From Podarcis muralis (taxonomy: Eukaryota), in assembly GCF_964188315.1 (NCBI RefSeq), contig NC_135662.1, positions 51,460,001-51,524,000 of the forward strand: a stretch of 64,000 nt of DNA, in the 5' to 3' direction. Below are positions 12,988 to 52,238 of this stretch, in pieces. Every line of letters begins with the position of its first letter. The stretch's first letter is position 1. A program made the position numbers and the translations under genes. The notes under the pieces are model-generated. The model was not told the origin of the DNA. It was given only the letters and a program-made list of their open reading frames with translations, and did no database searches.

Positions 12988-13026
<39 letters not shown>

Positions 13027-28201: not shown

Positions 28202-28267
<66 letters not shown>

Positions 28268-31200: not shown

Positions 31201-34200
31201 CATTGTTATTGGTTTCTAGGGCCCCCACAATTCTTGTTTTCATCACGATGGCACTCGTATGAGGTTTGTGCCCTTATAGAGTGATCAATACACATTCCCT
31301 GCTCATTGTACATCAGCTTTCAATACCATGGGTTATTATGAGATGCTGGTGATGTTTCTGTGGAAGCTAACAGGCATTTGAGAGATCTTATCATGTCCCT
31401 CTTTGCAGACAAGATAAACATGAGGCTGCTAAGTGGTATGTCTTTAATGTACTGCTCTTACTTCTTTCTTTAAAAAGTCTGACCCAGATGTAGTCTGGAT
31501 ACAGTTGGCGAGCCAATAGAAGCTGGAGTACAGGATTAGTACACAGGACATTATATGTTTAAATCAAAATATTTATATACCACGTTTCATTAAAAAAATC
31601 CCAAGGTGGCATGCACCAGGATTAACAAAAGGAGGTAAATAACTTGTATAGAATGATCATAAAAGTGACTGGCTCATCTTAAAAGTTTAAACCACGGAAT
31701 AGTGGACTTTCCCCCCAGGATTCCAGTCAAAATAGAAGGGTTAAACCTCCCCTTTCTATGTACTGTGGTCTCAATCCTGATTCCAATTAAAAAAAACTCT
31801 GACATTCCTGCAAGCCATCCCTTTAACATCCTGCGTAGCTAGTCCTAAGTTTGAGTGAATCATAAGCAGGAGATATACAGAAGATAGGAGGATTCATGTT
31901 AGTGATTAGATTCAACCTCCTCTAGATATCTGGTGAGTAGTCTAGGGTACTCTTGGATTCAGTGACAGTAATTGGAATGGTAGCCGGTGATGGTGGACGT
32001 GAACTATTCTCATCAACTGTATCTGATTAAAATGAGCTATGACATTATATTTCAGTTTCACAGCTGATGAATGTCAACCACAATTTTGAACCTGCACAGT
32101 AATATTGTGCTTGCAGGAGAGAATACGAGAGGAGGGAGGCAGACAGACACACAGAAAGAAAAGGACTACAGCTCTTATTAACAACACAAACAAGCATTAT
32201 GGAAACCTGGCACTGAGAGGACAGGGAATGAAACAGGTAGAAGGTAAGAAGACAATGCAGATCAATTACAGAGTCAGTTGTTTCTGTTTTTGTCTCATTT
32301 CACAGTTTTACCAGTTCCATTTCTTCTTCAAAATTTGCATACCTGCCCCAATATATAAGTTCCAGTTTCAACAGTGGACAATGAAACACCTGTCCAGAGC
32401 AATGACCCATCTAAAGGGATGCCAAGCACTGATGAAAAACCCAGGATCATATGACTGATTTTTTTCCTCATGGTCATCCAAAGAAGCAGTCAACAAACAC
32501 CCACAGTGATAACAAAAGTGAAACAGAAAGCAATGCAGATGAGGAGATGCAACAAGACTAAGGTCAAAGCAAGGCTTCACTCTCCATTTACCTCCTGTGG
32601 TGGACTGGAAAGGAGAAGTACTCCAATGATATGAACCACTAAAATCAGCTGCCACTGAAAGAAATCATTCATCCCAGAGTACCTGTCCAAATAAGAAAAT
32701 CTTACACGATTTCAGGCAGCCAAGAAAGGATGAGCACTGGCAGATCTCAGCAGGGAGGAAAAGAGATCAACAAGACTTTTTCATCTTACCTGTCCAGCAC
32801 CTGCATTCTCACACACATATGTCTCATAGTAATCCGAAAATTCTGGCGCATGTTCGTTAACATCACGAACATGTATATAAACATTCACTTTCGATATTTG
32901 TTTGGGGTTCACTGAAGCAAAGGAAACAAAAGTAAGTATAAATAAAAGGCAAAAATGGCAGCTCATAGTCTATTGTGCGACCCTATAGTATGATATATAA
33001 TTTTGTCATTAAAATGCTTTGTTCAGCTCTAGAAGACGTGACTATTGTAAAAAAAGAGAACACCTCTCCTGTGAGACATACTGTGCCTTTGATTTCAGGA
33101 ACAAATAGTATGACTGTTACATATTATTATATGTCACAATGAAATAATAATAAATATAATAGTCATTTTGCATAGCATTATCCACTGTGCTGATACAATG
33201 TCTTCAATAGGGGTAACTGCTTAGCATTCCATGACTACCTGTGACTGAGTCACATACAGTACAACATTCTAGAGCATGTGACGAGTTCATTTAGGCAAGT
33301 TCCTCCTTTGATCAGCGCAAGCGGCAAATTGCCTATTTGAAAGAGCAATGAAAGAATAAACACCCCAAACAAATATTGCGTGGACAGGCGGAGTCCCCAG
33401 ATCCCGAGTGCCCCCCCCCGTCATGTGGAATAACGACTCTAGACAATGTGCTATGGGATTAAATTGGCCACAACTTTATTAAATTTCAAATGTGGGTAGA
33501 CCTTGGCTCAGGCATTGGGCGTTCTCCCTCCCCAGTCCCCAGCCGGGGACCTAGGGAGCTTCAGGGTTATCCAGTGTGTGTGTGGGGGGATGGGCTGGCT
33601 CTGGAGAACATATGTTCAAGCAGAGACAGCCGCCCCCGTTACGCCGCCGCCGTAGGGGAGAACAATGACGACCTTTCGGCGTACGGTCAAAGCCTCCCTT
33701 CCGAAACCCCCTTTAACAGGGAACCCTGGTATCGTCGCCGCAAAGAGGAAGATGGACTAAAGGATTCCGCCCAAGGCCTGATACCGCCAAAGTTGTGACG
33801 TTTTGCTACGGGAAAGGCGAAACCTGCCAATTCCTTTCCGGCCCTTTAACAGCGACCTTACGTAGCAGCGCCCGCATACCTGTGAAGAAAAGTTAACCTG
33901 CGAAACCTGTGAAGAAAATTTAACCTGCAAAATAAGACATTAACTGAGGGTGGGTAGGGTGGGAGAAGCTCTGGAGCCAAGTGAGGATTACCAGGTAAGA
34001 TCCTCCCTCTATTGTGTGGGCAGGTAATCCCTCCCCCTACCTGGCCTGGTTTCCCTGGCAACGCTTCCCCCAGGTGGGATTGGACAACTCACTGAGGTAG
34101 GCGGTGACCTCCAGGTATCCCACCTGAGGGAAGGCAAAGCCTATGCTGATGGGGCCACTCCAGATCCAGGGCTGCACGCGTCCACGCAAAGGGCGCCCCC

Positions 34201-37200
34201 CGTTTTAAGCGGGGAGCGGTCATTCCCTGATGTGACTTAAGACAAATGTTGTAGGTAAATGAACTGAGTAAGCAATAACTGAGATATGGACAAATGTGAA
34301 AGAAAATAACTGAAAACCAGAACCACTGAAGGAAGGAATTTACTTTCTTACTTTCCTTCTTTCTAGCAATTCTTTTACAGAAGATATGATAATTTTAAAT
34401 GCTTTAAAACAAATGAATCTTTTGCTTAAGACAGGTATGACAGAGTATTGGCAGTCCCACACTTAAATAAGCTTAGTTTTCAAGAAGTACTTGATAAAGC
34501 CATTTTTGTCTTTACTTGTAAAAGTAAATGAAATCTAAAATTCTCTACAATGGCTATCAACAGTTTTATTTATTCATGGGATTTTCTTAGTCTTTGGATA
34601 TTGTTCCATAAGTCAACATATCATTGCTTAGAAAAAGCAGAAAAGGCTAATTTTCCCTTATGTTGAAAAGAGGAAAGGGATTGTGGGAACTGGTTGTAAA
34701 ATTTGGACATATTGACAAGGTCAGTCATGCCAATGGAAATCTGCTATAATGAATAAATGAATAAAATTTATAATGAATAAAATTAAAAGCAAAAATAAAA
34801 CCCATATTTTGAATAAAGGCCTTTGTGACATTTTTTGACAAACAAATAATGCCAAATAGTTCTGTTTTGTTGTTTTGAACAAAATGTTTTAGGCTCTTTT
34901 ATCATAACACCTGCTGTTCCAAAGAGGAATTTTCTTCTTCTCCCCAATTAGCTGTGCCAATGTTTGATAACAACTAACGTGACTTGCTTTTAAGAAATGA
35001 GGGTAGGATTACAGAAATTAATTCAGTATTTTTTGAAAAACCTCTGGAGAACAAAGATGTCAAACTAGATTGCCTATGTTATGTAATGCATTTTTTTTAT
35101 ATTGACCAAATTAATATGGCAACTATCACTTCCCAGCTGAACAGCAAAATAAAAGCTAGCATACAGGTATAGAACTTCTTTCTGGATAGTTTATCTCTAG
35201 ATAGTTTCAGACAACCAGGCTTTTCCCAGTAATCTGTAGCTTTCCTGGTCAGCAAGGGATGAAAATCGTATGCACGCTGCACAACCAACTTTCCTAATAT
35301 CCTAATTCTGCCACAGATACCAGGAAACTGTACTTATTAAAGATGTCTGTAACTAATGGGGCAATCCCGTAGCAAGATCCTCTGGGGTGAGTAGTTTAGC
35401 AAGCAGTGGTTCAGCTACAGTTAAGTCCCCAACCCTGGTTTAGTCAAAGATACACCACTGTAACTTGCTCATTCTATTCAGGACTCAGTAAGTCACCCAA
35501 AAGTGATGTTCCAGGGGCATGGTGGGGTGGGACCAGAAAGGGAGGATTTAGGCTGCAACCTAAGCCCGTTCAGCTCAGTCACAAGACCGAGCAACCCAGC
35601 ACAGAATGCTATCTGGAAGTCTCTCTCCTCTGCTAGTCTTAGGCAGAGCAGCAGCAGCAGCCCCACTACTGAATGGGGTCTGGATCTGGTGTAAATTTAT
35701 GCCAGCTTAATTTACGCTGGCTCACTTTTCTTGTGCATAGGATTGCTCCCTAAATCTATTCTGATTTTCAGTGCCTATAAATCATTGCATACAGCAATCC
35801 GAGATTTTCTAAAATTTGAATTTTGTGAGAATTTGTGATTTCAGAAAAAAGATGAGAGATATGTAGAGACAGATAACAGACTACGGAATACTATTTGGGA
35901 TATTGCACAAAGAAGATCTCTTTATTGTCATTCCGTGTTGTTGTTTTAAAGGAAACAGAACAAAAGTGAAAATGAAGGTTCAAAATTTCACGCAATATGT
36001 TGGAATGTTGCAAGGTGGAAGGGAAAAAATGAGCTATATTATTTTGAGTTAAACTGAACTCAGTTTAAAATCTATTAGGATTCTATTTAAAAAATCTGTA
36101 TAGTTTTTCCATGCTGTAAGTAATTTTTATTTTGGTATAATTTAATTTGTGTGTGCATTATCCTTTATAATGAAAAGCCCACAGCTCATCTTTTTGACAA
36201 GACAATCTCAAGTTATCTGAAATTGTTCCCTTGTGGTTTTCATTTACTCTTTTTATTGCTAGGCACTAAGTTTCTGGCACACTGTTCCAGATTTACATTT
36301 TTGATTTTTTGGAATTACCTCCCTAAGGCAAGGTGACCTGTAAGTGAGAGCACAAACGAGGCAATTTGCATTTGATTTTGAGACAAAACTGACAGGTGAT
36401 ATCTATATAAGGTATGCTTTCCTGATTTAATTGCAACTGTATGGAAGTCTAGCTGATTAAAGCCCTGCTTTCACAATTAATTTGAGACACAGGTTTCTGA
36501 CTGGTGTTAAATTAAACCCTGGCTAATTTCATACCAGTCAAAAAATCTGCTGTGAAATTAACTGGGGTCTAATTTAACATAAGATCTTGTACCAGGAGAG
36601 CAGTTTTATATGCTTCGGTGTAACTTAAAACTGTTTTAGTTTCCATTATTTTCTTTTTTAAAAAAATGGTATAATATTTTATGAGAATCCAAGACTTGGG
36701 AGATCAAACATTATTTGGCTTCCAACTCATCATTTTAGCAATGCTACATACGGTAATGTTAGCTAGCAACGGTAAAATAATGAAAAAGTAGCTTATTTTC
36801 TCAGTTCAGAAAGAAGAGATATACTGAAGATAATTGCAAGGAATTCATGCCATCGCTCAAGCATAGGGTTCCTTAATGTCTTACTCACTTGATTCTGTGG
36901 CTGAGACGGTTATGTTGTGCCAAGCCGCTATCTCTCGGTCCAGAGGTTTGGTTATACTGATTGTTCCATTGTGTGCATTGATGCTGAAAAATCCCTTTAA
37001 ATGCTTGCTGTGGACAATAGAATACCTGCACATCAAAGTAGGGAAGGGGGAGATGGAGACTTTCTTAAGAACTGAACAAAAATGGTACTTCTGAAACAAG
37101 GCTATATAAGCTATTGTCAGTGAAGAAAGGAGAGTGGTGTAGATATGAATATGGATGTGTTCTCCAGCTGCTCAGAAATCATGAAAAATGTACACTGATA

Positions 37201-40200
37201 AACATTTAAAATTCACTGCTACCAAGATCAAAGCGCTTCTTTCTATGAAACTAAATATGCCTCAGACCTATATTAATGTGAACCAAATCTAAAATGCATT
37301 ATTCATTCTCATTGCGCAGGCAGACTCACAGCAGGTGAGTGACTCAATTCAAAAGAAACAGCGAAGTGCCACTTGTAAAAGGAGTAACACTGGCAACTTA
37401 GTTGGGATATAACCGCACATTTATTTCATCATGGTTGGCTTGATGCAGTGTCAAAGAAGCAGAGCAAAGGAGGAAGAGCTGAAAAGAGCCCCCTTGATAG
37501 TATGTATCCCACTTCCATTAAATAAAAAGAATAGGTCAGAAAATGGTGTTGCCAGGAAGTGGGGGGAAAGACCTTTGGGCTTACTTTTCACAAACTGTTT
37601 TGTAAGGCAGAATAAGGTTTTCCTACTTAAAAGACCTCCTTCTTAGTTTCCCTACAGTATTCCAGCACCCCCTCCCCAAAAACAAAAACTGGATATTTTA
37701 TAGAGGGAATTTTTATATATTTTTTAATATATACTTATTCTGTACCCTTGGAAAGGGAGCACTCAAAGATCATTTTTTTAAAAAAATGGCTTACATTAAA
37801 GCAGGCATCACCAAACATGGGGTCATTTGACATTTTGAGAAAATGCTGTTGTTTGCAGAGAAGGCAAAGCGTAACACAAAATGGCTGCCATGGGGACATG
37901 GCATAATGCTTGCCACAACTAAAACAACAGAAAAAATGGAACAAGACCATAAATGGTGTGGGCATGCACCTCAGCAATGAAGAAAAGGCACCTACACCAG
38001 CCACCACAATTCATCTCAGTCACTGAGATAAATTATTGGGACTTCTCTGTTCAGATGACATGTTCATTGGCAGAGAGGCTGGGCCAGTGCAAACAGGAAC
38101 TGAGCAGGAACGGCTAACAATCTCATATGTTGTGGATTTTTGAGGAAATATTTACTGAGATCTTTTGCAGATACTATTGGAAATGCTGACAGGTCCCATG
38201 ATAGGGACCCCTACAATGAGATTTTGCAGAGTGCATGAGATCTCATGAAATTTGGGTGAGATCTTTTCAAAATCAGTGCTGCTGCTGGTGGTGCTTCTCT
38301 GCCAGTGGGGTGGGCAGGGCAGCAGCAGGGCAGCACTTCCCATTTTACCTAAATTGGATGACAAAATGGGATGTGCCACTCCTGATTAAAAGGTAAAGGT
38401 AAAGGTACCCCTGCCCGTACGGGCCAGTCTTGATCACTGCTCTGGCGAGCCAGAGCCGCACACGGAAACGCCGTTTACCTTCCCGCTAGTAAGCGGTCCC
38501 TATTTATCTACTTGCACCCGGGAGTGCTTTCGAACTGCTAGGTTGGCAGGCGCTGGGACCGAACAACGGGAGCGCACCCCACCGCAGGGGATTCGAACCG
38601 CCGACCTTTCGATCGGCAAGCCCTAGACGCTGAGGCTTTTACCCACAGCGCCACCCGCGTCCCCCCACTCCTGATTAGATAACCCATTAAAAGCAGCTAC
38701 TATTGAAAGAAATCATACATCCCAGAATACCTGTCCAAATAAGCAATTCTTATCAGATTTGTGGCAGCCAAGAAAACATGAGAAGTAACTCTGTTTCAAA
38801 ATGCTTGTATTGTTTAATAACCCCATTTTCTTTCCCAGGATTCACTTTACTTCACAAACTATAAAAGCAGTTATATTTATAAATCAGCAGTTCTTTCCAA
38901 ACAGCAAATGTGCAACTAAACACTGAATGTGCAGAGTCTGGATATGCACACAGAGGTCCCCCTATAGCAAGGCTTTGCCATTGTATTTAAGGGAAACAAA
39001 GCTCCATAAATGTACCATTTTAAACACAAACAGGAGAGCCTCAACTGAATTAATGGGGAAGTGCCATACACCTCTCAGACGGAACATACAGGTCTAGATT
39101 TGAGCTGCTGTCTTCAGTGTTATTCAAGAATCTATGACAATCTCAGCTGGAGAAGGATCTCTTGAAGCTGCACCTGATTGAACTGTTGACACTGTCTGGA
39201 TCTCTGGAACTCACAACTCCTACAAATGAATCATTCAAATCCCCTTCATCAATCTCCATCACAAATTCATCTAACGTGAAAATGGGAGGCTCATCAACAT
39301 CCTTCACTCTGATCCTAAGAGAAGTTGTGTCTTCAAATGGCCCATCTTTTAGGAAGCGCTCATCTATGTGCCTGTTGAAACCTTTCACTTTCATATTATA
39401 TATGCTTTGATTCTCATAATCCAATATCTGTATGTAAGAAAAGGAAGGGGGGGGGAGTAGAATAGTTTCCATTCAGCATTAGGAAGCTCATAATAAGTGT
39501 AGAATTAAAGACAATAAACATATTAATGGTTCATCTTTGCCTTACCTCTCTTTGCTTTTACTATTAAGTTTACTCCTTTAGTTTCCTGGTGTTTTTGATG
39601 ATCAATCATTGGGCTGGAGCCTGGCTTTAGGAGTCTGCTCCTTCCCTGAGCTCTTCCTCTTGGCATTTTGCTGTATGCTCCCTCCGTATATGCAGTGTGG
39701 GCTTTGGCTAGGTGCCTTTTAGAAGAGGCTGAGCAGGATTTTTTGGGGGGTGGGGGGTTCCTTCATTGCCCATTAAGGTACCTCCTTATTTGCCTACTCC
39801 ACACTGGGGACAATTTGGCTGGCATTCTGGGGAGTGGCATAGATTAACTGCTCATGGAGCATTGAGCCTGGGCATGTGAGGAAGCTGGGGGAAAAAACCT
39901 TAGGTATATTGAGGCATTACCAGGTTAAGGGCCCACTTTATGGATCCACCTGTGTTTTAGGTGTGGTGGCTTTGGGGAGGTGCCCTGTATGCCTGACATA
40001 CATATTATGGATGGGCACTGGGCAACAGGGCCTGGGTACACATGGGTAGCTCATACTCAAGGCTCACCCAGCAAAAAAAGGCATTGTTTCCTCCTCATCC
40101 TTTGCTGGGGAGCCACAACCTACAGCTGTATCCCATGCCCAAGGGTCTGAAGGGATGCTTCCCTACCATAGACAAAATTATCAGCTGACCACAGTTTCTG

Positions 40201-43200
40201 AATGTGGTTAATTTGGTTTGTTGTTCCTGCAAGGTGTTGCATTAATTAAAATGCCATTGTCCCATGTTTGATCTCATGAATTTGTGTGGGTCTAGGGCCA
40301 TACTTTTCTGCATACAGCCAATCTATCCTGGATCATGCCGGAGTTTGGCATACGTCTGAGAGAAGATTTTCTTCTTCAAAACAGCCCTTTATATTGCATT
40401 GATATTTTATCATGACCAACAACACAAGGCTATAACAAGCAAACGTACTTAATCTTGTCTGTTTCAATGATTTCTGTGGTATTTCTTTGTCAAGTAATGG
40501 CTGACGTCTCACCTTGTTTAATATGACAGTTCCTTCTTGAGTCTCATTGTTAGTAACGATGCGAACAATGTGAGGAGTGTCTCCTTCTATTACATAGTCC
40601 ATGGCAGCATTCTCTCCCAGGTCACTGTCATCTGCCTTGATTTTGCCTAGAATGCTGCCCACGGGTGCTGCCTCAGATGCATACATTTCATAACGCTCTT
40701 GAAGAAACAACCAAATATCAGAGAAAGTTGCCAACACAATCTTGATCACCGACATAACAACTAAATGTAGACCACTTTTTATTCTGAAAATTGCCCAGTT
40801 ACACAAGATGTATGGCTTGGGGGTGGGGGAGCTTATGTCATAAGCTCATTTTCTTTTGTGAAGCTTGGCAGCCTTGACTTGGATCATCCATTCATGAGTT
40901 TCAACATTCATGAGCCAATTCAACATTCCAGTTGTTTATAAGTTCACTTGCTTGCTTGTGTGCAATACAAAAACTCAATTGAACAATGACATATCAATTG
41001 TCCAACAACCAATTTCAAAGAGGGGAAATGAAAAATACAACTAATTGTGACTGAAACATCCAAGACTGACTTCATTTTTAAGGAAGACTGGAAAGATGTA
41101 TGATGCTTTGCAACACAATACCTCAATATATTTCATTAGCTAAGCATCTAGAAATGGTCCCTAAGCAGTTGTGGGTTGTTTCGTATTGAAAGTAATACAT
41201 TCTACATCCTCTAATGATGTGTTCAGTGTAAACACATCATTAGGTCACTTTATGATGCTCATGTCTAGAATATTTTTCCTTGTGCTTTCATTGCACAGTA
41301 GCAACCTAGTACCCACTAAAATTAAAGGTTTCAAACATTCTGCCTTCTGAGGCTCATTCCAGATCACTTTGTCTTTTGAGGAACATGTGGAGAAGGTTTG
41401 GAGGAAATGTCATTACATGTGCACACAATTCACTGTACTGATCAGGACTGCTGGACCTCACCATTGCTCTACTAGAACTGAAAGTGCACCCAAAATTATA
41501 CTCAGCACCACCCTGCACATGAGAAAATTGTTCACAGCATTGTAGGAGAGGAGAGAAAATTGCAGGCTGTCTGTCTTTTAGGGAAACACATTTCCATGAC
41601 TGCTTTTTTTTTAACTGAGGAACACCTGATAAGTTTTTAGAGAATCCAAGTAGTGAAAACCACTACCATAAATTACAGATTTTCTGTTATTAAAAATCTA
41701 AGGTGTACTATGCCTTGCCTGCTAGATTGCACTGAGATGTGTTGGTCCCAAGTTACTCAGTTTATATTTATCACTTAATTAGTTGGTCCTCAGAGGATTT
41801 TTGTCCTTAGCAAAACCTCATTTTATCCTTGTCGGTATAACAACACTAGTTTCAAAAATATAGGCTGCTATCCCCAAGAGAGGTGGAAATTGTATTAGGT
41901 GTTCAACGGAAGAGTTTCTTTCTATTTTAAATATCTGTATAGAAAGTGATAAGGCTGAGACAAAATGGCAGGGAACATGTTTTGTGTGAGTTTTACCTCC
42001 TCCAAAAAGAGATGCTCCCTCTTTCAGCAATGGGAAATACCAATATGGGAAAAAAATATTTGTAGCATGGTTCTCTCTCTAACACCCATTCAAGATAAAA
42101 GCGATGCTCCTGGACCTTATTCTGAATTGCCTTTTTGTGATGCAGTAAAATCTAAGCGGCTCTGTGGTATTTTTACATAATCAAATGTATTAGGTGATCC
42201 CTGTTTGGTTAGAATCATTCAAGGAAGGGGAAGACATAGTGGAGAGGTACATGGCACTAAAGCAGCAGTGAAGAAAAATAATTTTTCAGGATTCTCCATG
42301 TATACTCTAAACATTTTCACAGGGTGACTATTGGAAGAACTGTTTGTTCAAATGAAGCAGCTGCTTGCCTGGTGATGGACATGCAACTAAAGAAGAAACA
42401 GTTGCAGTTTTCTGACTGTGTTTTCTTTACAGGTTGCTCTATGCTTTTATTTTTTATAGCTATTTAAACATAGTGACTACATCTATGTTACCAAGACAAA
42501 ATTGACAGTACAAATTTAAAGTAGTGAGAAAAGACTGAATTTGTAGCAGTAGTAGAGTTCTAGATGCCTCAGTTAAGAATTCACAGAAGTACATTTCTCA
42601 AAGTTCCTTTATCTAAATTATAAACGTTCCAACGAAATGGCTTATGGAGTCTGGACACACTGGGTTTACCTTCCTTTGGCATTAATTATACTATCAATGC
42701 AATGTTTCTTTGAATGGGTTATAAAGAGACAATGACATTTAATCAAGGAACATAATGCAATATAAAAACATTAATTTTTAAGTTTTGTACAAAAGTATTT
42801 CACATATAACATATGTTTTATTTATCAGAATTAGTTGGTCTGAATTTGCTCCCAACATTTAAAAAAAATATATGAACCAAAAGACATTTTACTCACTCTG
42901 CTGAAATCGAGGAGGATTGTCATTAACATCAGAGAGGTTGATAGTTACAGTTGTGGTAGCTGTAGGGACACCTGCTTCACCAACTCTGGCTTGAATGACA
43001 ACAAAGCACTGATCCTGTGTTTCTCTGTCCATTGGGTAAGCCGTTCTTACTACCCCTGCAAAATATACAATATTTACAGCACAGTTAGATGTCAATGAGA
43101 CCTGCAGCCTGGCAAGCATGTACAGCACTGGAATCTTAAAGTTCAAACTATTTTTCTCACACCAACGCATGAGAGTATTTTATCATACCATTGCCCCAGT

Positions 43201-46200
43201 CTAGAAAGGACACTTTGCATGCACAGAGGGTTTCCATGATTGGATAGCCTCTGGCTCTGCCTTTGTATGGACAAAAAGAAAAGGAAGCCTACAGGATGGT
43301 ATTCTGATGGCCCCAGCTGTTTTGAAATCTGAAGGTACTGCTGAATTAGTACTGTGACCTGTAAGGTAGGGCTAAGGAACTTGTGACCCCCCCCCCAAGA
43401 TTATTGAACTACAACTCCCATCATCCCCGAACACATAGACTTGTGTTGATGGGAGCTGGAATCCAATAACATCTGGAGGACCACAAATCCCCCTTCCCTG
43501 TTCTAAGAGCCCAGTTGCCTGTTTGGGAAAGACAGTCACTCTCTACCTCCAGCTGGTGAGAAGTGCAGTCAAAGCAATCTGGGTCAGTATCTGTTGATTT
43601 AGAAGCCGTGCACCACACACAGCTGGGTACATTTTGAAGAGCAATTCATATATGGAAGCTTATGTGGGTTGAAAATGACCACAACTTTACTTGTTACAGC
43701 TGGGATCACTGGGTGGGCTGCTCCTATGGGCCGTGTAAACAAACACACAAAGTCCCAGAATNNNNNNNNNNNNNNNNNNNNNNNNNNNNNNNNNNNNNNN
43801 NNNNNNNNNNNNNNNNNNNNNNNNNNNNNNNNNNNNNNNNNNNNNNNNNNNNNNNNNNNNNNNNNNNNNNNNNNNNNNNNNNNNNNNNNNNNNNNNNNCC
43901 TTCATCTTCATCAATGGAGCATGGGAGAGGGGGCCAGCATGGGGAAAAGGCAGCATCTTCCTGCAGCTCCATTATGTTCATTTAATCTTAGATGAAATCT
44001 GGATCCAACCCAGTTCTTTTAATTTAATTATAATACAGATATAACATCAAAGGGAAATTATTGGTTATACAGGTTTTTCACACCCATGTTGTGCATTACT
44101 GATACTCAAGAGTCTTATATCCATAACCAGCAATACCTGTTGTTGGCTCCACAGAAAAATAGGGTTGTTCAGAAGGGATACTGTAAAGCAGGCGGGCACC
44201 TGTTGGAGCTGTAGCTGTAACCTGAATCACCGAAGTACCTGTGGAAGTGTGGAGTGAAAGGCACAGTTCTTATGGGAGCATTTACTATAGCTAGCCATGT
44301 AAAAAAGTTACTCATTGTTTGTTAATGTTTCTATATGTATATAGACATATAGGCAACATAAAGATACTTTCTTTTCATGATCCTGTTAGGGAAAGTAAGG
44401 GTTAGGGTTAGTTTACATGCTTTATTCAATATATAAATAAATACCAGTGTAGATGAAATCCTCTTTTGTGTGTGACCCTTTATTTACCAAAGTATAGTGG
44501 ATCTCTTTACAGAGACACCCAGCTTTTGGAATTATTCACCTGAAAAGCTACCTGTCTCATTTTTTATGAGATTGCGAAGCCTAGCAGAATCTAAATCTTG
44601 TCCTCCTTTTTACTGAATTTCACTGTGAATGCCTCCCATATCACTGCAAGGACAGCTACTTTTGGATTACATTTTGCCCATGGTAACAATGTGTAAACTA
44701 ACCATTTTATGTATTGCATTTTTAGATTTCTACTATGGCCTTTAGACAAAATGGAAATAAAACTCAACTGACAGCACAATCCTATGCATTTCTGTGGAAT
44801 TTAAGTAATGTAAGTAACAATGTAATCCAGATCCATGATCTGGTTGGATTAGAGTTTGGATCTTGGGCTTTCCTGGTTGAGCCTTGCCTCAGCCAGGGCT
44901 CAGCAGCTTTAAGACTCTCTCAAAATATACATCTCAAAAGCCAGTCTAAAGAGGCACATCCACCAAAAGCTGTGTAATGAAGATGTACCTGTTTGGGAAG
45001 GGAGTTCCACATTATAGGGGCTGCCACAGGAAATGCCCTCCCCAGGGCCACCCCCCCCCCCCAAGCATCTGAGGGTGGTTGGACAGTACTCCCTAAGCCA
45101 GGCTTCTTCGAACTCAGCCCTCCAGATGTTTTTGGCCTACAACTCCCATGATCCCTACCTAGCAAGACCAGTGGTCAGGGATGATGGGTATTGTAGTCTC
45201 AAAACATCTGGAGGGCTGAGTTTGAGGAAGCCTGCCCATGCTGATCTGAACACCAAGGGGTCTGTAGGGAATGATGTGGTCTTCAGCTATTCAGGGCCTG
45301 AGTCATTTAGGGCTTTAAACACTAATTTGAGCACCTTAAATTCAGTCTAGAAATGAACTGGCAACTAGTGCAGTTGTTTTTACTTGGCCATATTTTTAAA
45401 ACAGGAGTATGGGGCCTGTGGCGCTCTAGATATGGCTCAGCTACAACTCCCATCATTCCTGGCCTTTGACTATGCTGGCTGTTGTTGAAGGGAGCTGAAG
45501 TCCAGCAACATATTGAGAGCCACAGTTCCCCCATTCCTGTTTTACACTTTGTTTTCCGCACACATGTGTACTTATGCGAGATGCTCTCTTAATTTTACAC
45601 TGGCTACAGGTTTAAGAGATAATAAAGGACTCCATATTTAAAAAAACCAAAACACAAAAAACCACCAAACCAGGAGCACTGCATCAGTCCTTAATTTAAT
45701 GCCTGTGGTGCGGCTTAAAAGAAATAAACTCAAAAGAAGCAATGCAGGCAAGACACACAACAGGATTCTGATAGCTTTTTATATCCTTGAGGTTGGTAAT
45801 GAGCATTTTCCACTGAATAACAGATAGTGCAATCCATCTAGAGAAGACAATTTTGTCTCTGGTTGGGAGCTGGCTATATCCTAGATCTAAATCTGACACC
45901 ATCCCCACGGGCCTTTCATAAGATTATACCCATGAAGGAAATATTCGTCAGAGCTTCTCATTTTATAATGCAGTGTTTATGTCTAACTCATTTCTTTCCT
46001 AACTCCTAAATACAAATACAAATCGACCTCTCTTGGGGCGTGCAAGACCTCCAGCCACTTTCTATCATAGAATCACATTATCACATCTTATCCCAAGACA
46101 TTCCACTACAACGGCATGTTTCTCTGATAAATTAGTCAGCAGCACCCTCAGGACTTTTAGATGCCTATATAAAGCTGTAACATTATCTGTAAATATGTTG

Positions 46201-49200
46201 ATAGGGAATCTGGCTGTTTTCATGGCATCAAAAGAAATGTCCCAAACTAATGGCTTGTGTGTTGTATCTCACCTGCAAACTTATTTGTATACTATTACTT
46301 AAGAAAGCAGCACAGAGTATTACATTTATTTGCTTGGAAGCTTCTTTGGGACCACATCATTTAAGTCAATTATGTCTACCCTGTGGGCCTTCAGAGGTTG
46401 TTGGACTACAACTTTCATCATCACTGACCAATGGCCATGATAGTTGGGGCTGATGGGAGTCCAATAACTTCAGGAAGGCTGCAGTTTCCCCATCCCTAGT
46501 ATATTTTGGCTGTGACTTGGTTTAAGTAAAAAGGAAGTCACTACTAAAAAGATAATCCTTAGGTAACACCCACTACTATAATCTTATTATTGTGTGGCTT
46601 CAATCATGTGATTTTTTTGAATGGCCCATGAGGCACTGAATAGCTCATGAGGCTAGACATATGGCACATAAACTGGATTGCTACATACATATGTTTATAT
46701 GATCCTGAGGTAATACGAGAAGAACAACTCTGAAATCTGCATTACAATAACCAGATGGATATTCAGCTTTTTGCAGACTTATAAGACCATTCAGGAAAAT
46801 GCTAGAAATGTGGCAACCTAATAATTTCAAAAAGTTGACAAAGATGAATCAGTTGTGCCATGGAATTTGTTCCTTCAGTAGCTTCCCCATATTACATTTA
46901 ATAGTTTCCAAATACTATAGGACCTCAAGATTGTGTACTCAAAAATGATTTCAACTAATTAAAAATGATTTCACGTGTGACTATTAGGCTACAGTGTTTA
47001 AACTGAAATGTTACTCTCACAAGTACAACAACTTGTCAGAGTTGATGAAGACGAGAACCATGGAAGCAATGAATGGAATAAGAATGCAATAATAATACAA
47101 TACAGTGGTACCTCGGGTTAAGTACTTAATTCGTTCCGGAGGTCTGTTCTTAACCTGAAATTGTTCTTAACCTGAAGAACCACTTTAGCTAACGGGGCCT
47201 CCTGCTGCCGCTGCGCCGCTGGAGCACGATTTGTGTTCTCATCCTGAAGCAAAGTTCTTAACCTAAAGCACTATTTCCGGGTTAGCGGAGTCTGTAACCT
47301 GAAGAGTATGTAACCTGAAGCGTATGTAACCTGAAGCCTATGTAACCTGAGGTACCACTATATGTCCTGAATTTGCTACTAGACAGCGGTATAAATAATA
47401 ATACCATGGAAATTGCAGAAAAACTATATGGATAAAGTTTTAAATCATATCTCAAACCCACTGAAATATAAAGTATGACAACTGCACTCAAATCTTGCTC
47501 ATTTTTATAAATGTATTGTGTCTATAGACATTTAAACTATATGATTTACACTCATTGAAAGTACCAACTAGCAGGGGGTGGGGACAGAGATCATAGCGTT
47601 GTATTTGCAGAAGAGTCTACAGTGGTACCTCGGTTTTCGAAAGTCTCTGCTGATGAACATTTCGGTTTTCGAACACCATAAACCTGGAAGTAAATGCCTC
47701 GGTTTTCGAACACACCTCGGAAATCGAACACGCCACGCAGCTTCTACTGAGTGCAAGATCCTGAGGCCTAGCTGTCGGCTATTGATTTTTTGGTTTTCAA
47801 ATGTTTTAGAACTCAAACTGTCTTCTGGAATGGATTATGTTCAAAAACTAAGGTATCACTGTATTTCCTGTTACACTTTAATTTAGTATAACACTTGTAT
47901 TTAAAACCTGAAGAAAATGTAAATGCGGGGAAGTAAGAAAGTATAGTGGCAAAGTAAGAAAGTGTATTAAATAATAAATTAATGTGCATTCATGTTAATA
48001 CAGGTATTGATTCTTGAAATCTCACTTAGAGCTAAATATTCTGCTGAAGAAACTATATAATTTGAAGAGCCCTGGAGAGACTGTGTGAATGTGAGATAGC
48101 AACTGAATGCTAGGAAGGAAGCATTTAAAGAAGAAGTTAAAACTTAATTTAAGCAGTTAAACCAGATTTAAATTGGTATATCTCCTATCCTTTTGCAGAA
48201 CCCCCAAAAAGAAGGATGTGATCTAAACAAGCTACAATTTAGATCTCAGGAAGCAAGCTAGTCCAAAAGAGATGTTCAGATGGAGAAAACAGAAAAATAA
48301 AACCAAATCAGAGATTAAAGACTCATACAGACAATGTGTTTATTGTGCATTCATACTGATTTGCTTACTCAAGGGTTATATAGTGTCCACTCTTTTTGAG
48401 CATTTGTTCTGATTTGGTTCTGGGATGCTTATGTGGCAAAGAGCCTTTTCTGCAGTGGCTCCCCATTTGTGGAATGCTCTTCTGGCATTTTCATTATATA
48501 TTGTTTCTCTATAACCTTGCCTTTGGTTGATAAAACATTGTATGGCCTTTTAAATATGTTTGTGGGAGGCGGGTATTTGGTTTTTTGTTTTGTTTTGTTT
48601 TCTTTATTGCGTGTTCTGTGTTCTCATTTGGTATTTTTATGTAACTTTGCCCAGCCTTTTGCTGCAATCTATGGGCCACAGCATCACTGGGCAAAGGCAT
48701 CCCATGATTATTGGGCATGGAACAAGGTTTATAGGAATGAGAGGGATGTGATGATTAGAAATGCTGGTTTAGAGAAACCCCATTGGTTTGCACATATTTA
48801 AAGTCCTGAATCTTTTCAAATTTTGATTCTTTAGGAAAATGAAATAATCTAGCTGCAACAGCCTACTTCATACACACAAACACATAGAATAAATGCAAGG
48901 TCAAAGTACAACACACAGTACCTCTTACAGACATTTCAGGAACAGTGGCTTCATAGGGTTCATTCAAGAAATGTGGTCCATTATCAGCCAGGGAATTGTC
49001 TTGCTTATCTACATCAGATTTCAGCTGCGAGAATAATGAGTAACAAGCTGATTTCAAGATAGGATTCAAACAAACAAACCTTATCAAATTTAATGTCAAG
49101 TCGGTTTCCCCCCAATAAGGTCAGAAATCCCTTTGATGTATTGATTTATACCAAATTGAATGAGATTGTAGTATGTCATTCTGATTGCAAAGCAAATGGA

Positions 49201-52200
49201 GTCAATTTATTTTCGTAATTAGCAGAATTTTCTCCTTGTAATAGAAACAAACAGTTGCGGAATTTCACGAATGCCCCATGATTCATCAGTTCAGATATAA
49301 AAGCTGCCCAATATCTGGAAACAACTTTCTGGAAACAACTAAAAGCATTTTTGATCTGACAGACTTTAACAGCTGGATAAATGGGTCCTTGCCATGAATG
49401 TCTATTTTGTATGATTTTAGTTTTGTTTTAAACATATTTGCTGTTTTGGTTGTCTTTATTGTAAATCATCTTGAAATGCTTGTTTGGAGTGTGAATAATT
49501 AATTGATTGATTGATTGATAATTCTTGCAAAGACTAAATAACAAGTATTTGGATCTGGTATCCATCATTTTCTATATTAGCGTGGTGAAATCTTCTCCTT
49601 AGTATGGCATCAGTGAAAAAATGCAAGTTCTTCAGATATGACAAATTTAAATGATATGAGGTGCTAATCAAAATTCAAATATTTATCAAACCATCTTGAT
49701 ATATTAAACTCCATTTCCCAAAGCTGAGAAACACCAGCCATCTTGATTAATAATCAATCAGTCTTCCCAGGGAATTCTAGGAACTGTAAGAGGAAAAGTG
49801 GTCTCCTAACAACTCTCAGCACCGTTAGCAAACTACAGTTCCCATGAATCTTTGGAGGAAGCCATCTCTGTTTAAAGTGCTATAATACTGCTTTAAATGC
49901 ATAGTGCACATGAGGCCTCAATAAGGCTTTTTAAGGCTTATATGTTTAAGGAGAAACTTCAGAAGCCGTTTCTAAATGCATTGATGACAAAAAGGAGGGG
50001 CAAAGGTACCCAGAAAATGCTTCCTATAAACAAATAGAGGCCCTCTGCATCACATTACATTCTGCAAATTAAATCCATATTTGCTTTTGGTGTTGTTGTT
50101 TTTTAAAAAAGCAAACTTTCTGAAAGCTGATCACATTTTTGTGACCTTTCTGTTAAAAGAAAAGTGACCCATATTTGCAGATTCACAAAATATAAAGGGA
50201 TTGTCTTGTTGTATCCTTTTGAAATGAGACATCATACTTCCAGAGTTTTTACTTTGAAAGGCTGTAAAAAGTAATTAATGAATTTTGAGCACTTCACCCT
50301 TTGGGCCCAATTAAATTTTAGTGCTAGTTAATTAGTGGTTAAACTTTTTTTTGCCATTCATTCAGCTCAAAAGTTGCCTTACAGGAAAAGGATGCAAGAT
50401 GGGAGATTAAAAATGGCTTTAGCATTGTGTGTTTTTTTATTCTCTTGTTTTGATTTGGTGTTGTTTTTTTTAAGTAACTAAATAACAGCAATAAAGAAGA
50501 AGGGGGAAGAATCATTAAGAAAATTACTGGGCATCGTATGCATTTTCAAACAGGGTGGAAAATAATTGCTTATTGTGCCCAAGTCACGTTAACGTAATGA
50601 ACTGTGTCGGTTCCTGGTGCTTTCTTACTGGTAAAAAGGATTTAGTATTAATCTGCTTCATTAAAAATTAATGAGGGGTAAATCAAATGCCACTTAACGT
50701 AACAGAATATCAATCTAAATAGTGTTGGTAAACTGCATTGCTGCTCAGTGTGTCTGTTCTGATGCAATGCCAAAAAAAGGGGGGGGGAGAGAAAAAGCCT
50801 AAGCAAGTTGCCAGATGTTGATAAATGAATCCTTTCTTTCTTTTCGGAAGATGGAAGGGAATTTCAAAACACTTTTGTCAATACAGCATGATACTATTTT
50901 TTAATTGCACAGTTCCTTTTCCTGTGCTGTAGCCCAGATAAAAGTCCAGAAATACGTACATACCAATCTTCAAGTTAAACTACTATGATTGGCTACCTCA
51001 GCCCATAGGGAATTCGATTCTGAGTTTGTAAGTTCCTTCAAGGAGCCAGGGAAATGCTGAGAAGTGGCCTAAACCAAATATGGTTTTAAGTTTATGATAG
51101 CAACTTTAGTGTCAAACGAGTACTTGCGGTTGAAGGACAGGCTGGATGATGAAAAGTGGTGGGAGGTGCCAACCCAAGAACCCCTTAGAGATGACATAGA
51201 GGAAGAAGACTTGGACCAGGACAGTGGTGGTGGGACACTGAGGAAGAAAGCTGGGAAGTGGTAGAAGCAGGAGGCTTGAGTGAACATAGAGAGTCAGAAG
51301 AAGGAAGCTGTCCACAGACAAGGTGGGATGCCAAGTATGTCAGTTTGAGTGCAGACTCTGAAAGAGAGCAGCCAGAAGCTGCCTCAGTTTCATATCAGTA
51401 GGCAAGTCCTTCTACAGTGGCCTCTCCTCCTCCACTGACACCAAGATCATGAAGAGCCTTGCACATTGCTGAGCAACAGGCCAGACAGGCCCAGAGGAGG
51501 GGTCACTCCTCCTCACCATAGTTTATGTCTGCTTGGGAGGAGTCCAGAGGCAAAGGGCTAAAGAGGGAAGGAGGGGACAGATGCCAGCCACAACAACGTC
51601 TTCAACTGGGGCAGTTGAGCCTGAGTGAACTCTGCTGTGTTTTCCTTTTCTGAATGAAAAAGCTGACTGCACATTGAGTCTTGAGTCATCATTCTGACCT
51701 GTGGATGATCCTGCCTGTCTGACAGTCCTAACACAGAATCTTACATGGCTCTCTGACCAAGTCCTCCAGTCCCAAGTAAAACCTTGACAGGAGATCTTTC
51801 AGATTCTCTGATGCTAAAGCATCTTTGAAAACATGGAGCAGATCGTTAAACAGTGCAAGAAGGGCAAAGATGGTGCTTATTCTTCAGGTATTGCTGTATA
51901 TTGCTGCACATCTCAGAAGAAAGGTTTCAAGGAGACTGTTCTTTCACAAGGCCAGATTGAGGGAAGATTTAGAAAAGCAAGCAGGTATTAATCAACACCT
52001 CAACGAGATGTTAAACCTCCCACAGAAAGAGTTACTGTACCTGGCCCGATTTCAAAGGATGTGTTAACATCAGTTCTTCCTGTACAACCAGCAGGTTCCG
52101 AACCCCGCCATGTTTCACTCTCTGACGTCTCACAAATGCTTGCTCCAAGTCATCGGGGTTACACTTGTGCGTACAGGGAAAACAGGGCCCAAGCTGAGCC

Positions 52201-52238
52201 AGGGTCAGTGCGAGTGAGAGCCATTTGTAACAATGCAT
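12446..52238 (-). CDS. CDH19: Cadherin-19-like type II cadherin; 11 coding exons, 2124 nt, 707 aa; lacks most of EC1
   Basis: Join(52238-52041, 49024-48922, 44238-44137, 43055-42897, 40697-40513, 39427-39174, 37025-36889, 32911-32790, 20118-20001, 14370-14119, 12939-12446). All junctions are AG/GT with matching phases. The sum is 2124 nt = 708 codons including TAG. The tail [20 protein letters not shown] and the MHCY start match recalled CDH19 rather than CDH7/CDH20. Confidence 0.92.
12991..13024. repeat. (CA)17 microsatellite about 50 nt upstream of the last CDH19 acceptor
   Basis: Read directly. Confidence 0.97.
13736..13968. mobile_element. Tc1/mariner-type MITE (TTCGAAAACC subfamily)
   Basis: TA|CAGTGGTACCTCGG...CTGAGGTACCACTG|TA. 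Confidence 0.82.
14119..14370 (-). CDS. CDH19: CDH19 coding exon 10 (EC5 end and transmembrane helix), 252 nt
   Basis: TTTTTTAAAG|NTARII...[22 protein letters not shown]...[13 protein letters not shown]|GTAAGA. Confidence 0.93.
16335..16566 (+). mobile_element. RTE-BovB LINE 3' end
   Basis: Translates as [30 protein letters not shown]; ends GAAGAGTCGGACACGACTAAATGACTAAACAACAA. Confidence 0.88.
17150..17570 (+). mobile_element. Degenerate CR1 LINE 3' fragment
   Basis: AGAACTCAGGGCCACCCATTGAAGCTGAATGTTGGAAGATTCAAGACAGACAAAAGAAAG resembles the end of CR1 ORF2, followed by 3' UTR-like sequence. Confidence 0.7.
19388..19638 (-). mobile_element. tRNA-derived SINE (Squam3-like)
   Basis: The minus strand reads GAGCCAGTGTGGTGTAGTGGTTAAGAGC (A box)...ATATCAAATCCAAAC...(TTC)n tail. 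Confidence 0.78.
20001..20118 (-). CDS. CDH19: CDH19 coding exon 9 (EC5), 118 nt; absent from the ORF track
   Basis: GCTTTTAG|[39 protein letters not shown]|GTAGGT; canonical length. Confidence 0.92.
26724..27602. mobile_element. Unclassified ATIR-plus-hairpin element, copy B
   Basis: Imperfect hairpin at 26730-26754. TTTGTGTGCCC (26758-26768) pairs with GGGCACACAAA (27592-27602). CCAAT-like, TATA-like and shared family motifs lie inside. Confidence 0.7.
28199..28267. repeat. Compound (TG)n(AG)n microsatellite
   Basis: Read directly. Confidence 0.97.
29872..30319. mobile_element. Unclassified ATIR-plus-hairpin element, copy C (short, internally deleted)
   Basis: Hairpin GGATCCTC-ctaaca-GAGGGTCC at 29872-29893. 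GTTGTGCT (29896-29903) pairs with AGCACAAC (30311-30318). AATAAAGTTGTGGCC at 30215-30229. The 3' part closely resembles copy A. Confidence 0.7.
32790..32911 (-). CDS. CDH19: CDH19 coding exon 8 (EC4/EC5), 122 nt
   Basis: TTGCTTCAG|[40 protein letters not shown]|GTAAGA. Confidence 0.93.
33376..34224. mobile_element. Unclassified ATIR-plus-hairpin element, copy D
   Basis: TTGCGTGGAC (33376-33385) pairs with GTCCACGCAA (34180-34189). Hairpin CGCCCCCCG-ttttaag-CGGGGAGCG at 34194-34218, then GTCATT as in copy B. Contains a 27-nt tandem duplication at 33878-33931. Confidence 0.72.
36889..37025 (-). CDS. CDH19: CDH19 coding exon 7 (EC4), 137 nt
   Basis: GTGCAG|[45 protein letters not shown]|GTGAGT. 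Confidence 0.93.
38389..38664 (-). mobile_element. Sauria SINE (second subtype) with about 90-nt internal deletion and 13-bp TSD
   Basis: TSD CCACTCCTGATTA at 38376-38388 and 38665-38677. The deletion is relative to the copy at 53532-53895. Confidence 0.92.
39174..39427 (-). CDS. CDH19: CDH19 coding exon 6 (EC3/EC4), 254 nt
   Basis: TACAG|ILDYENQ...GPFEDTT...DVDEPP...[11 protein letters not shown](R)|GTGCAG; canonical length. Confidence 0.93.
40513..40697 (-). CDS. CDH19: CDH19 coding exon 5 (EC3), 185 nt
   Basis: TTCTTCAAG|[34 protein letters not shown]...[10 protein letters not shown]|GTGAGA; canonical length. Confidence 0.92.
42897..43055 (-). CDS. CDH19: CDH19 coding exon 4 (EC2), 159 nt (canonical 165)
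   Basis: TTTGCAG|[52 protein letters not shown]|GTGAGT. Confidence 0.93.
43762..43898. other. Assembly gap, 137 N, inside a CDH19 intron
   Basis: Run of N between the exons at 44137-44238 and 42897-43055. Confidence 1.
44137..44238 (-). CDS. CDH19: CDH19 coding exon 3 (EC2), 102 nt (canonical 120); absent from the ORF track
   Basis: CTTCCACAG|(G)[33 protein letters not shown](G)|GTATTG; phase 1 to 1. Confidence 0.9.
47103..47360. mobile_element. Tc1/mariner-type MITE (TTAACCTGA-rich subfamily)
   Basis: TA|CAGTGGTACCTCGG...GAGGTACCACTA|TA. Confidence 0.82.
47620..47861. mobile_element. Tc1/mariner-type MITE (TTCGAAAACC subfamily)
   Basis: TA|CAGTGGTACCTCGG...AAGGTATCACTG|TA; the interior is the inverse of 13736-13968. 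Confidence 0.82.
48922..49024 (-). CDS. CDH19: CDH19 coding exon 2, shortened to 103 nt (canonical about 295 nt)
   Basis: TTCTCGCAG|[35 protein letters not shown]|GTACTG; phase 0 to 1. Confidence 0.9.
51110..51724. mobile_element. Degenerate solo-LTR-like sequence in the intron after the first coding exon
   Basis: Purine-rich, GC-elevated block bounded by TGTC...GACA. No TSD found, so boundaries are approximate. Confidence 0.4.
52041..52238 (-). CDS. CDH19: CDH19 first coding exon (signal peptide, prodomain, EC1 strand A), 198 coding nt
   Basis: [21 protein letters not shown]...[30 protein letters not shown]. Donor CAG|GTACAG at 52040. Acceptor TTTTTGTCTTCCCACAG places the exon start at 52268. 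Confidence 0.9.

What the first reader, a model, noticed from the sequence alone, without database searches (positions are those of the whole stretch)
42897..44238. Two more in-frame deletions remove the EC2 half of the EC1-EC2 calcium site while later sites are kept
Seen: [14 protein letters not shown] replaces canonical VTA(S/T)-DADDPxxGNN-ARLLYS (exon 102 vs 120 nt). IQAR-VG replaces IQAK-DM-(I/V)G (159 vs 165 nt). Established: the EC2 DxD, GN and AxD residues coordinate Ca2+ at the EC1-EC2 junction, together with EC1 DRE and the DxNDN linker, which are also deleted or reduced to ADN here. Motifs for the other junctions persist: VPEMS, MDRE, DVNDN, DDSD, GENA, LDYE, DVDEPP, DPD, LDRE, DVNEH, DKD, ADNG. 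Three deletions in three exons, all multiples of 3 and all hitting one functional site, argue against an assembly artefact or random decay. Inference: constraint was lost only at the EC1-EC2 junction while the rest stayed under selection, so EC2 became the new N-terminal domain.
Basis: partly seen in the sequence, partly recalled or inferred. Interest (0 to 1): 0.75.

Follow-up and report, generated by a model that had tools for sequence, protein, structure and literature searches.

The report
Lizard cadherin-19 lost orphaned calcium site
In wall-lizard cadherin-19, which already lacks its outermost domain, two small in-frame deletions have also removed the next domain's share of the calcium site that joined the two; both deletions are real, expressed, and shared by lizards and snakes.

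Summary
The window holds CDH19 of Podarcis muralis on the minus strand: 11 coding exons and an intact 707-aa frame. Exon 3 (44238-44137) is 102 nt, against 120 nt in turtle and alligator. Exon 4 (43055-42897) is 159 nt, against 165 nt. The missing 18 nt encode the DXD...GN loop of EC2 and the missing 6 nt encode the Asp-Met of the XDX-top motif.

The N gap (43762-43898) lies inside intron 3. Transcript-like contigs from three studies and raw RNA reads join 44137 to 43055 exactly, so the coding sequence is continuous and in frame.

The deletions are ancient, not species-specific.
- The 18-nt loss is in all 32 other squamate species examined (Anolis is net 12 nt shorter).
- The 6-nt loss is only in Lacertoidea plus Toxicofera (27 species). 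Three geckos and two scincoids keep the Asp-Met.
- So the 6-nt loss came after the EC1 loss. The order of the 18-nt loss and the EC1 loss is unresolved, because no tuatara CDH19 was found.

All calcium ligands of the EC2-3, EC3-4 and EC4-5 junctions are kept. EC2 is under purifying selection (omega 0.28), and relaxation is confined to its two apex loops.

The scan had already noted the EC1 loss on this same window (s1-152527). This finding is its corollary: a new variant of a known kind, of moderate interest.

The parts
44137..44238 (-). CDH19 coding exon 3, 102 nt (canonical 120 nt). It encodes EC2 strand B, a shortened BC loop and strand C ([20 protein letters not shown]...).
   Evidence: Sequence and AG/GT borders. 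Turtle and alligator have 120 nt. PDB alignments show a 6-residue gap. The exon is present with no insertions or deletions in RNA contigs.
44209..44214 (-). Approximate junction of the 18-nt deletion, about 44212|44211 (the alignment can shift by a few nt). It removed the second Asp of DXD, the following Asp, and Pro-x-Tyr-Gly (turtle D134-G139). The flanking D132 and N140 have since changed to Ala and Thr in this species.
   Evidence: DNA alignment of exon 3 in 8 species. Ligand table.
42897..43055 (-). CDH19 coding exon 4, 159 nt (canonical 165 nt). It encodes EC2 strands D-G, MDRE, a shortened FG region (IQAR-VGEAG) and the DVNDNPPRF linker to EC3.
   Evidence: Spliced to exon 3 and exon 5 in RNA contigs.
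42983..42986 (-). Junction of the 6-nt deletion, about 42985|42984. It removed Asp-Met of the XDX-top motif (turtle D186-M187).
   Evidence: DNA alignment. The deletion is absent from Gekko and Tiliqua and present in Python, Anolis, Elgaria, Zootoca and the window.
43056..44136 (-). Intron 3 (GT..AG on the minus strand). It contains the assembly gap 43762-43898 and a dispersed repeat around 43400-43490.
   Evidence: Joint 44137|43055 in contigs of X1, X5 and X10 and in 3 raw RNA reads of X21. Orthologous introns are 1004-2677 nt long.
48922..49024 (-). Coding exon 2, 103 nt (canonical 295 nt). It holds the EC1 remnant ([11 protein letters not shown]), the linker remnant (L-ADN-GPHF) and the start of EC2 (VPEMS).
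   Evidence: The loose end of the RNA contig beyond 44240 matches the 3' end of this exon.
52041..52238 (-). Coding exon 1: start codon, signal-peptide-like stretch, prodomain remnant and degenerate EC1 A strand ([12 protein letters not shown]).
12449..40697 (-). Coding exons 5-11 (40697-40513, 39427-39174, 37025-36889, 32911-32790, 20118-20001, 14370-14119, 12939-12449). They encode EC3-EC5 with all calcium motifs, the transmembrane helix and the catenin-binding tail.

Best explanation
This is the functional CDH19 gene of Podarcis muralis. A 180-nt in-frame deletion in exon 2 removed the body of EC1 in the squamate stem lineage. With EC1 gone, the residues that EC2 contributed to the three-calcium site at the EC1-EC2 junction had no partners and no longer mattered. 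These residues are the DXD...N residues in the BC loop and the XDX-top Asp in the FG loop.

They were then lost piecemeal.
- An 18-nt deletion shortened the BC loop on the squamate stem.
- A 6-nt deletion removed the FG-loop Asp-Met later, on the stem of Lacertoidea plus Toxicofera.
- The surviving ligands (D132, N140) drifted in some lineages, and further small in-frame indels hit the same spot in skinks, colubrine snakes and anoles.

Both deletions lie in loops at the membrane-distal tip of the EC2 beta-sandwich, so the fold is kept. The rest of the protein stays under purifying selection: EC2 core, EC3-EC5 with complete calcium sites, transmembrane helix and catenin-binding tail.

Shown here: the deletions, their phylogenetic distribution, expression, selection, and the retained sites. 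Inferred: that loss of constraint (rather than selection for removal) drove them, and what the four-domain protein does. My guess is a calcium-stiffened, catenin-binding cadherin that cannot strand-swap and so acts through cis or heterophilic contacts.
For: Exon sizes are 198/103/102/159 in the window, against 198/295/120/165 in turtle and alligator.

Gaps fall at identical DNA positions across species.

Distribution in 32 other squamate species: the 6-residue loss is in all (Anolis net 4). The Asp-Met loss is in 27 species of Lacertoidea plus Toxicofera and in none of 3 geckos, Tiliqua or Hemicordylus.

The junction L-(T/A)-D-N in exon 2 is shared by geckos and the other squamates. This points to a single ancestral EC1 deletion.

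The calcium-ligand table shows junctions 2-3, 3-4 and 4-5 essentially invariant and junction 1-2 lost.

Omega by domain in 7 squamates: EC2 0.275, EC3 0.40, EC4 0.62, EC5 0.26, tail 0.24. Omega=1 is rejected for EC2 (2dlnL 64.8).

Relaxation is local to the apex loops.

In the AlphaFold model, EC2 and EC3 are confident. The deletions sit at loop 111-116 and at the end of strand 150-159 / loop 160-165. The best structural match is mouse cadherin-8 EC1-3.

Pfam finds 4 cadherin repeats, against 5 in turtle, plus the cytoplasmic domain.

Spliced transcripts carry both short exons, and all variants seen in them are synonymous.

Motif roles (XEX-base, DRE, DXNDN, DXD, XDX-top) are as described in PMC5120219.
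Against: The order of the EC1 loss and the 18-nt loss is not resolved. Both map to the same branch, and no tuatara sequence was found.

Neutral relaxation cannot be separated from selection to remove uncompensated acidic residues.

Three contig runs are only guessed to be RNA. Firm RNA support for the exon 3-4 joint is 3 raw reads in one run.

Omega values come from only 7 squamate coding sequences, and the outgroup baseline is a single pair.

No calcium binding or adhesion was measured.
Confidence: 0.8

Rival explanations
1. Reverse order for the larger deletion. The 18-nt loss of the DXD loop came first and destroyed calcium binding at the EC1-EC2 junction. That made EC1 floppy and non-adhesive, and EC1 was deleted afterwards.
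For: Both events are shared by all squamates sampled and so lie on the same stem branch. Nothing here orders them.
Against: About 120 EC1-bearing CDH19 proteins from turtles, crocodilians, birds, a monotreme and amphibians all keep the loop. This shows strong constraint while EC1 exists. The 6-nt loss demonstrably followed the EC1 loss.
Confidence: 0.12
2. Adaptive remodelling. The deletions were selected, either to remove an unpaired acidic cluster from the new free tip or to shape a new binding surface on EC2. They did not simply drift.
For: EC2 as a whole stays strongly constrained. In-frame indels cluster at this spot: about 7 events there, against about 4-5 in the rest of the ectodomain.
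Against: Decay is slow and uneven. D132 survives in geckos, skinks, Rhineura, Elgaria, Varanus and agamids, and the FG-loop Asp survives in geckos and scincoids. After the deletions, the apex loops are the least conserved part of EC2. That is not what a new binding site would show.
Confidence: 0.15
3. Decaying pseudogene or assembly/annotation artefact.
For: The gene lacks its adhesive domain, and an assembly gap lies between the two exons.
Against: The 707-aa frame is intact with AG/GT at every intron. The same structure occurs in 32 other species. Omega is well below 1. Spliced transcripts cross the gap-bearing intron, and the gap is intronic.
Confidence: 0.02

Closest known systems
Canonical vertebrate cadherin-19 (type II classical cadherin), e.g. 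turtle, alligator, bird, echidna and amphibian CDH19
   Same: Orthologous by best hits (62-69% identity outside the deleted parts). It has the same 11-coding-exon layout, the same EC2-EC5 calcium motifs, and the same transmembrane and catenin-binding tail.
   Different: It has five EC domains, with W2/W4, an RxKR cleavage site and a complete EC1-EC2 calcium site. [quoted passage not shown]
Calcium-free or partial-calcium linkers in other cadherins (protocadherin-15 EC9-10, LI-cadherin EC2-3, Drosophila N-cadherin)
   Same: The canonical motifs XEX, DRE, DXNDN, DXD and XDX-top are replaced or missing at one junction while neighbouring junctions are canonical (PMC5120219; PMC8427231).
   Different: In those proteins both flanking domains persist, and the calcium-free linker acts as a bend or hinge. 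Here the upstream domain itself is gone, so the half-site is orphaned at the tip of the molecule.
Engineered N-terminally truncated classical cadherins used as dominant negatives (from my own knowledge; not checked here)
   Same: The adhesive EC1 is absent and the catenin-binding tail is intact.
   Different: Those are laboratory constructs. This is a natural gene kept under purifying selection across all major squamate clades, with EC2-EC5 and their calcium sites also conserved.

Membership tests
Type II classical cadherin (CDH19 orthologue) | Orthology to CDH19: best matches and conserved exon structure | tested here: met
   Best non-squamate hits are turtle, crocodilian and bird cadherin-19. 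Exons 5-10 are 185/254/137/122/118/252 nt, as in turtle and alligator. The protein is identical to NCBI 'cadherin-19-like [Podarcis muralis]'.
Type II classical cadherin (CDH19 orthologue) | Five extracellular cadherin repeats | tested here: not met
   Pfam finds 4 cadherin stretches, against 5 in turtle. 64 residues of EC1 are missing.
Type II classical cadherin (CDH19 orthologue) | Trp2 and Trp4 at the mature N-terminus, after an RxKR cleavage site | tested here: not met
   The window reads RVKH-GGVRN where turtle reads RVKR-GWVWS. The skink Tiliqua still has RAKR-GWAWS.
Type II classical cadherin (CDH19 orthologue) | Cytoplasmic domain with the juxtamembrane (p120) and beta-catenin binding regions | tested here: met
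   PF01049 hit. [16 protein letters not shown] and GSLSSLGSS are conserved in the alignment. Omega is 0.24. Binding itself was not tested.
Type II classical cadherin (CDH19 orthologue) | Complete three-calcium site at every EC-EC junction | tested here: not met
   The EC1-2 site is lost. The EC2-3, EC3-4 and EC4-5 sites are complete.
Cadherins with a calcium-free linker | Two adjacent folded EC repeats joined by a linker that lacks the canonical motifs | tested here: not met
   The upstream repeat is absent. Residues 15-79 are predicted with pLDDT below 50.

The most novel reading that the evidence does not exclude
Squamate CDH19 is not merely a truncated adhesion molecule. It may be a four-domain cadherin with a new job, and the stepwise trimming of the EC2 apex (BC and FG loops) would then be part of building a new calcium-independent tip that binds a different partner. 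That would make it a naturally evolved change of binding mode inside the classical cadherin family.
Probability: 0.15. Interest if true: 0.7.

Novelty: new variant of a known kind. Interest (0 to 1): 0.5.

Why it matters
This is a clean natural experiment on how a multi-domain protein adjusts after losing a domain. The ligands that the surviving neighbour lent to the shared calcium site decay locally and step by step over roughly 200 million years. They are lost through in-frame loop deletions, while everything else stays constrained.

The order of steps can be read from the squamate tree. That gives dated intermediates (gecko-like, skink-like, lacertid/snake-like) that can be expressed and compared.

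It also sharpens the open question raised by the sibling finding: what does a conserved classical cadherin without its adhesive domain do? I found no paper that describes this.

Tried and rejected
- **Tuatara.** No Sphenodon CDH19 appeared in three protein searches. An unnamed Logan protein, P0278, turned out to be salamander-like. The stem-branch order therefore stays open.
- **Missing loci.** The Paroedura isoform is not on record, and the Rhineura gene range is too long to fetch. Both are missing from the DNA-level analyses.
- **Exon mapping.** A first exon mapper that filtered tblastn hits failed. I replaced it with exact-match chaining.
- **Representative-library search.** A search with one exon mostly returned giant cadherins. 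It still yielded the first squamate ids.
- **EC1 test.** A first regular-expression test for EC1 gave false positives and negatives. I corrected and hand-checked it. Three EC1-less turtle 'isoforms' are computational alternative-first-exon models and keep the full loop.
- **Literature.** Searches for CDH19 with squamate or lizard found nothing relevant.
- **Rejected readings.** I rejected a hidden exon in the assembly gap, because the protein alignment has no missing residues between exons 3 and 4 and transcripts join them directly. I rejected pseudogene decay because omega is below 1 and frames are intact.
Full report
**1. What is at the coordinates**

The finding lies in a type II cadherin gene on the minus strand. 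Reading the minus strand gives two exons with AG/GT borders.
- Exon 3 is 44238-44137 (102 nt) and encodes [34 protein letters not shown].
- Exon 4 is 43055-42897 (159 nt) and encodes [12 protein letters not shown]...[11 protein letters not shown]...[11 protein letters not shown].

A sequence search of solved structures aligns exon 3 to cadherin-7, -10 and -11 with six residues missing at the DADDPTYGNS stretch. It aligns exon 4 to cadherin-8 with a gap at AKDMGG.

Mapping the Zootoca CDH19 protein and its exons onto the window gives 11 coding exons, all with AG/GT borders. They are 52238-52041, 49024-48922, 44238-44137, 43055-42897, 40697-40513, 39427-39174, 37025-36889, 32911-32790, 20118-20001, 14370-14119 and 12939-12449. 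The frame is intact and 707 aa long. That protein is identical, with 0 differences, to the NCBI entry 'cadherin-19-like [Podarcis muralis]'.

**2. The assembly gap**

The window has a single N run, at 43762-43898. It lies inside intron 3 (43056-44136), 238 nt from the donor and 706 nt from the acceptor.

I laid four runs on window:40480-44290, which is 3,811 letters and under the 6,000 limit. The joint 44137|43055 (GT..AG on the minus strand) is present in one contig each of X1, X5 and X10. These come from three studies, and their library type is only guessed to be RNA. The joint is also in 3 raw reads of the RNA-seq run X21. The joint 42897|40697 is in X1 and in one raw read.

No insertions or deletions were seen in either exon. 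The X1 contig runs on into the 3' end of exon 2. The variant letters seen in exons 3 and 4 are all synonymous.

So the two exons are adjacent and in frame in the mRNA, and nothing coding is hidden in the gap. The protein alignment also shows no missing residues between them.

**3. Canonical sizes and the exact lesions**

I fetched the genomic loci of eight CDH19 proteins and mapped them exactly.

| Species | Sizes of the first coding exons (nt) |
|---|---|
| Turtle, alligator | 198, 295, 120, 165, 185, 254, 137, 122, 118, 252 |
| Zootoca, Elgaria, Python, window | 198, 103, 102, 159, 185 ... |
| Anolis | exon 3 is 108 |
| Gekko | exons 2-4 are 115, 102, 165 |
| Tiliqua | exons 2-4 are 55, 102, 165 |

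The DNA alignment shows one 18-nt gap at the same place in every squamate. It shows one 6-nt gap (GATATG, Asp-Met) only in Python, Anolis, Elgaria, Zootoca and the window.

In turtle mature numbering, the 18-nt loss removes D134-G139. This includes the second Asp of DXD. The 6-nt loss removes D186-M187, the XDX-top Asp. [quoted passage not shown]

**4. Who has the deletions**

Three protein searches and one cluster listing gave CDH19 from 32 other squamate species and many outgroups.
- The 6-residue loss is in every squamate that covers the region. The two Anolis species are net 4 residues shorter. Other iguanians have the standard state, so Anolis most simply gained 6 nt back.
- The Asp-Met loss is in all 27 species of Lacertoidea plus Toxicofera: Podarcis x3, Zootoca, Rhineura, Elgaria, Varanus, 16 snakes, 2 agamids and 2 anoles.
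- The Asp-Met loss is absent from Paroedura, Heteronotia, Gekko, Tiliqua and Hemicordylus.

On the accepted squamate tree (my knowledge: Gekkota, then Scincoidea, then Lacertoidea plus Toxicofera), this places the 18-nt loss on the squamate stem. It places the 6-nt loss on the stem of Lacertoidea plus Toxicofera.

The EC1 deletion shares the junction L-(T/A)-D-N in geckos and the other squamates. It is therefore best read as one ancestral 180-nt event (G41-N100). Further trimming followed:
- 12 nt (FKYI) outside geckos;
- down to 55 nt in scincoids;
- 2 more residues in colubrine snakes.

So the 6-nt loss clearly followed the EC1 loss. The 18-nt loss and the EC1 loss cannot be ordered, because no tuatara CDH19 was found.

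None of about 120 CDH19 proteins that keep EC1 lacks the DXD loop or the Asp. These include turtles, crocodilians, birds, echidna, axolotl, a caecilian and a frog.

**5. Is only this junction affected?**

A table of ligand positions in 14 squamates and 6 outgroups shows junctions EC2-3, EC3-4 and EC4-5 essentially invariant. The only changes are a conservative D428E in all squamates and variation at one secondary position. At junction EC1-2, only E11 and D101 survive in the window species.

Pairwise dN/dS for EC2 among squamates is 0.20-0.36. That is the same range as EC3-EC5. The turtle-alligator value for EC2 is 0.16.

| Region | Omega, codon model on 7 squamates |
|---|---|
| N-terminal remnant | 0.51 |
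| EC2 | 0.275 |
| EC3 | 0.40 |
| EC4 | 0.62 |
| EC5 | 0.26 |
| Transmembrane | 0.21 |
| Tail | 0.24 |

Omega=1 is rejected for EC2 (2dlnL 64.8) and for the remnant (14.6).

Mean pairwise identity, squamates against outgroups:

| Region | Squamates | Outgroups |
|---|---|---|
| Surviving BC-loop residues of EC2 | 0.61 | 0.80 |
| Surviving FG-loop residues of EC2 | 0.54 | 0.76 |
| Rest of EC2 | 0.83 | 0.79 |
| Homologous loop of EC3 | 0.82 | 0.84 |
| EC3-EC5 | 0.69 | 0.63-0.65 |

Relaxation is therefore local to the old junction. In-frame indels also cluster there: about 7 events, against about 4-5 in the remaining roughly 450 ectodomain residues.

**6. Structure**

I ran AlphaFold2 on residues 1-305 with a 28-sequence alignment. 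EC2 (from about residue 84) and EC3 are confident. Residues 15-79 have pLDDT below 50.

The 18-nt loss falls in loop 111-116, between strands 103-110 and 117-120. The 6-nt loss falls at the end of strand 150-159 and loop 160-165. Both are at the membrane-distal end of the sandwich.

The best structural match is mouse cadherin-8 EC1-3, with 224 aligned columns and 46% identity. Pfam counts 4 cadherin repeats, against 5 in turtle, plus the cytoplasmic domain.

EC2 is thus the first folded domain, preceded by a probably flexible tail.

**7. Explanation and rivals**

Best reading (confidence 0.8): once EC1 was deleted, the EC2 half of the calcium site was orphaned. It decayed by loop deletions and substitutions while the rest of the protein stayed functional.

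The uneven survival of D132 and of the FG-loop Asp in several lineages fits loss of constraint better than selection for removal. So does the low conservation of the loops afterwards.

The rivals are:
- reverse order for the 18-nt event (0.12);
- adaptive remodelling of a new tip (0.15);
- pseudogene or artefact (0.02, refuted).

**8. Comparison and novelty**

By orthology this is CDH19. It fails three defining features of a classical type II cadherin: five repeats, the Trp2/Trp4 pair after a cleavage site, and a complete first calcium site.

It resembles calcium-free linkers of protocadherin-15 and LI-cadherin only in motif loss. In those proteins both flanking domains persist.

I found no literature on squamate CDH19.

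The scan had already noted and followed up the EC1 loss on this same window (s1-152527) and the Trp/cleavage-site changes (s1-152891). The present finding is their corollary. It adds the dated, stepwise series and the locality test.

Verdict: a new variant of a known kind; interest 0.5.

Noticed in passing
L002:6629-6826 and L002:9959-10013 (Tiliqua scincoides): The skink's annotated CDH19 (612 aa) starts at an internal Met. An intact upstream exon 1 and a 55-nt exon 2 exist. Exon 1 still encodes the RAKR cleavage site followed by GWAWS, so both strand-swap tryptophans are kept although the body of EC1 is gone. Hemicordylus likewise keeps RVKR-GW.
   Followed up: partly
Protein alignment; exon 2 remnant (window 48922-49024 is the orthologous place): Colubrine snakes (Ahaetulla, Pituophis, Pantherophis) have lost two more residues of the linker remnant (L--NGPQF). 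Scincoids have lost the whole LKSD...DN part. Geckos keep four more EC1 residues (QEYI/QKHI) than other squamates.
   Followed up: partly
L005 (Anolis carolinensis) exon 3, and Anolis sagrei protein P0329: Anolis exon 3 is 108 nt, not 102. An extra 6 nt (Gly-Pro/Asp-Ser region) looks like a secondary insertion into the already shortened loop.
   Followed up: no
window 43400-43490 and 41664-41682: Short intronic stretches are matched by many unrelated contigs of the RNA-like runs, at high depth and on both strands. This behaves like a dispersed repeat expressed within other transcripts.
   Followed up: no
window 52120-52131 (minus strand, exon 1): The canonical RVKR site is RVKH here, but an RRQR (RRRR in Zootoca) lies three residues upstream. 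It fits a minimal RxxR furin motif, so the N-terminal tail might still be cleaved.
   Followed up: no
window 40557 (exon 5): One RNA-like contig (run X5) carries a Val-to-Ile variant at codon 235. All other variants seen in exons 3-5 are synonymous.
   Followed up: no
P0151 (Rhineura floridana) and P0240 (Crotalus adamanteus): These annotated proteins carry an odd 50-residue C-terminal extension (gene range 171 kb) and an internal 12-residue duplication plus a divergent tail, respectively. They look like gene-model errors.
   Followed up: no
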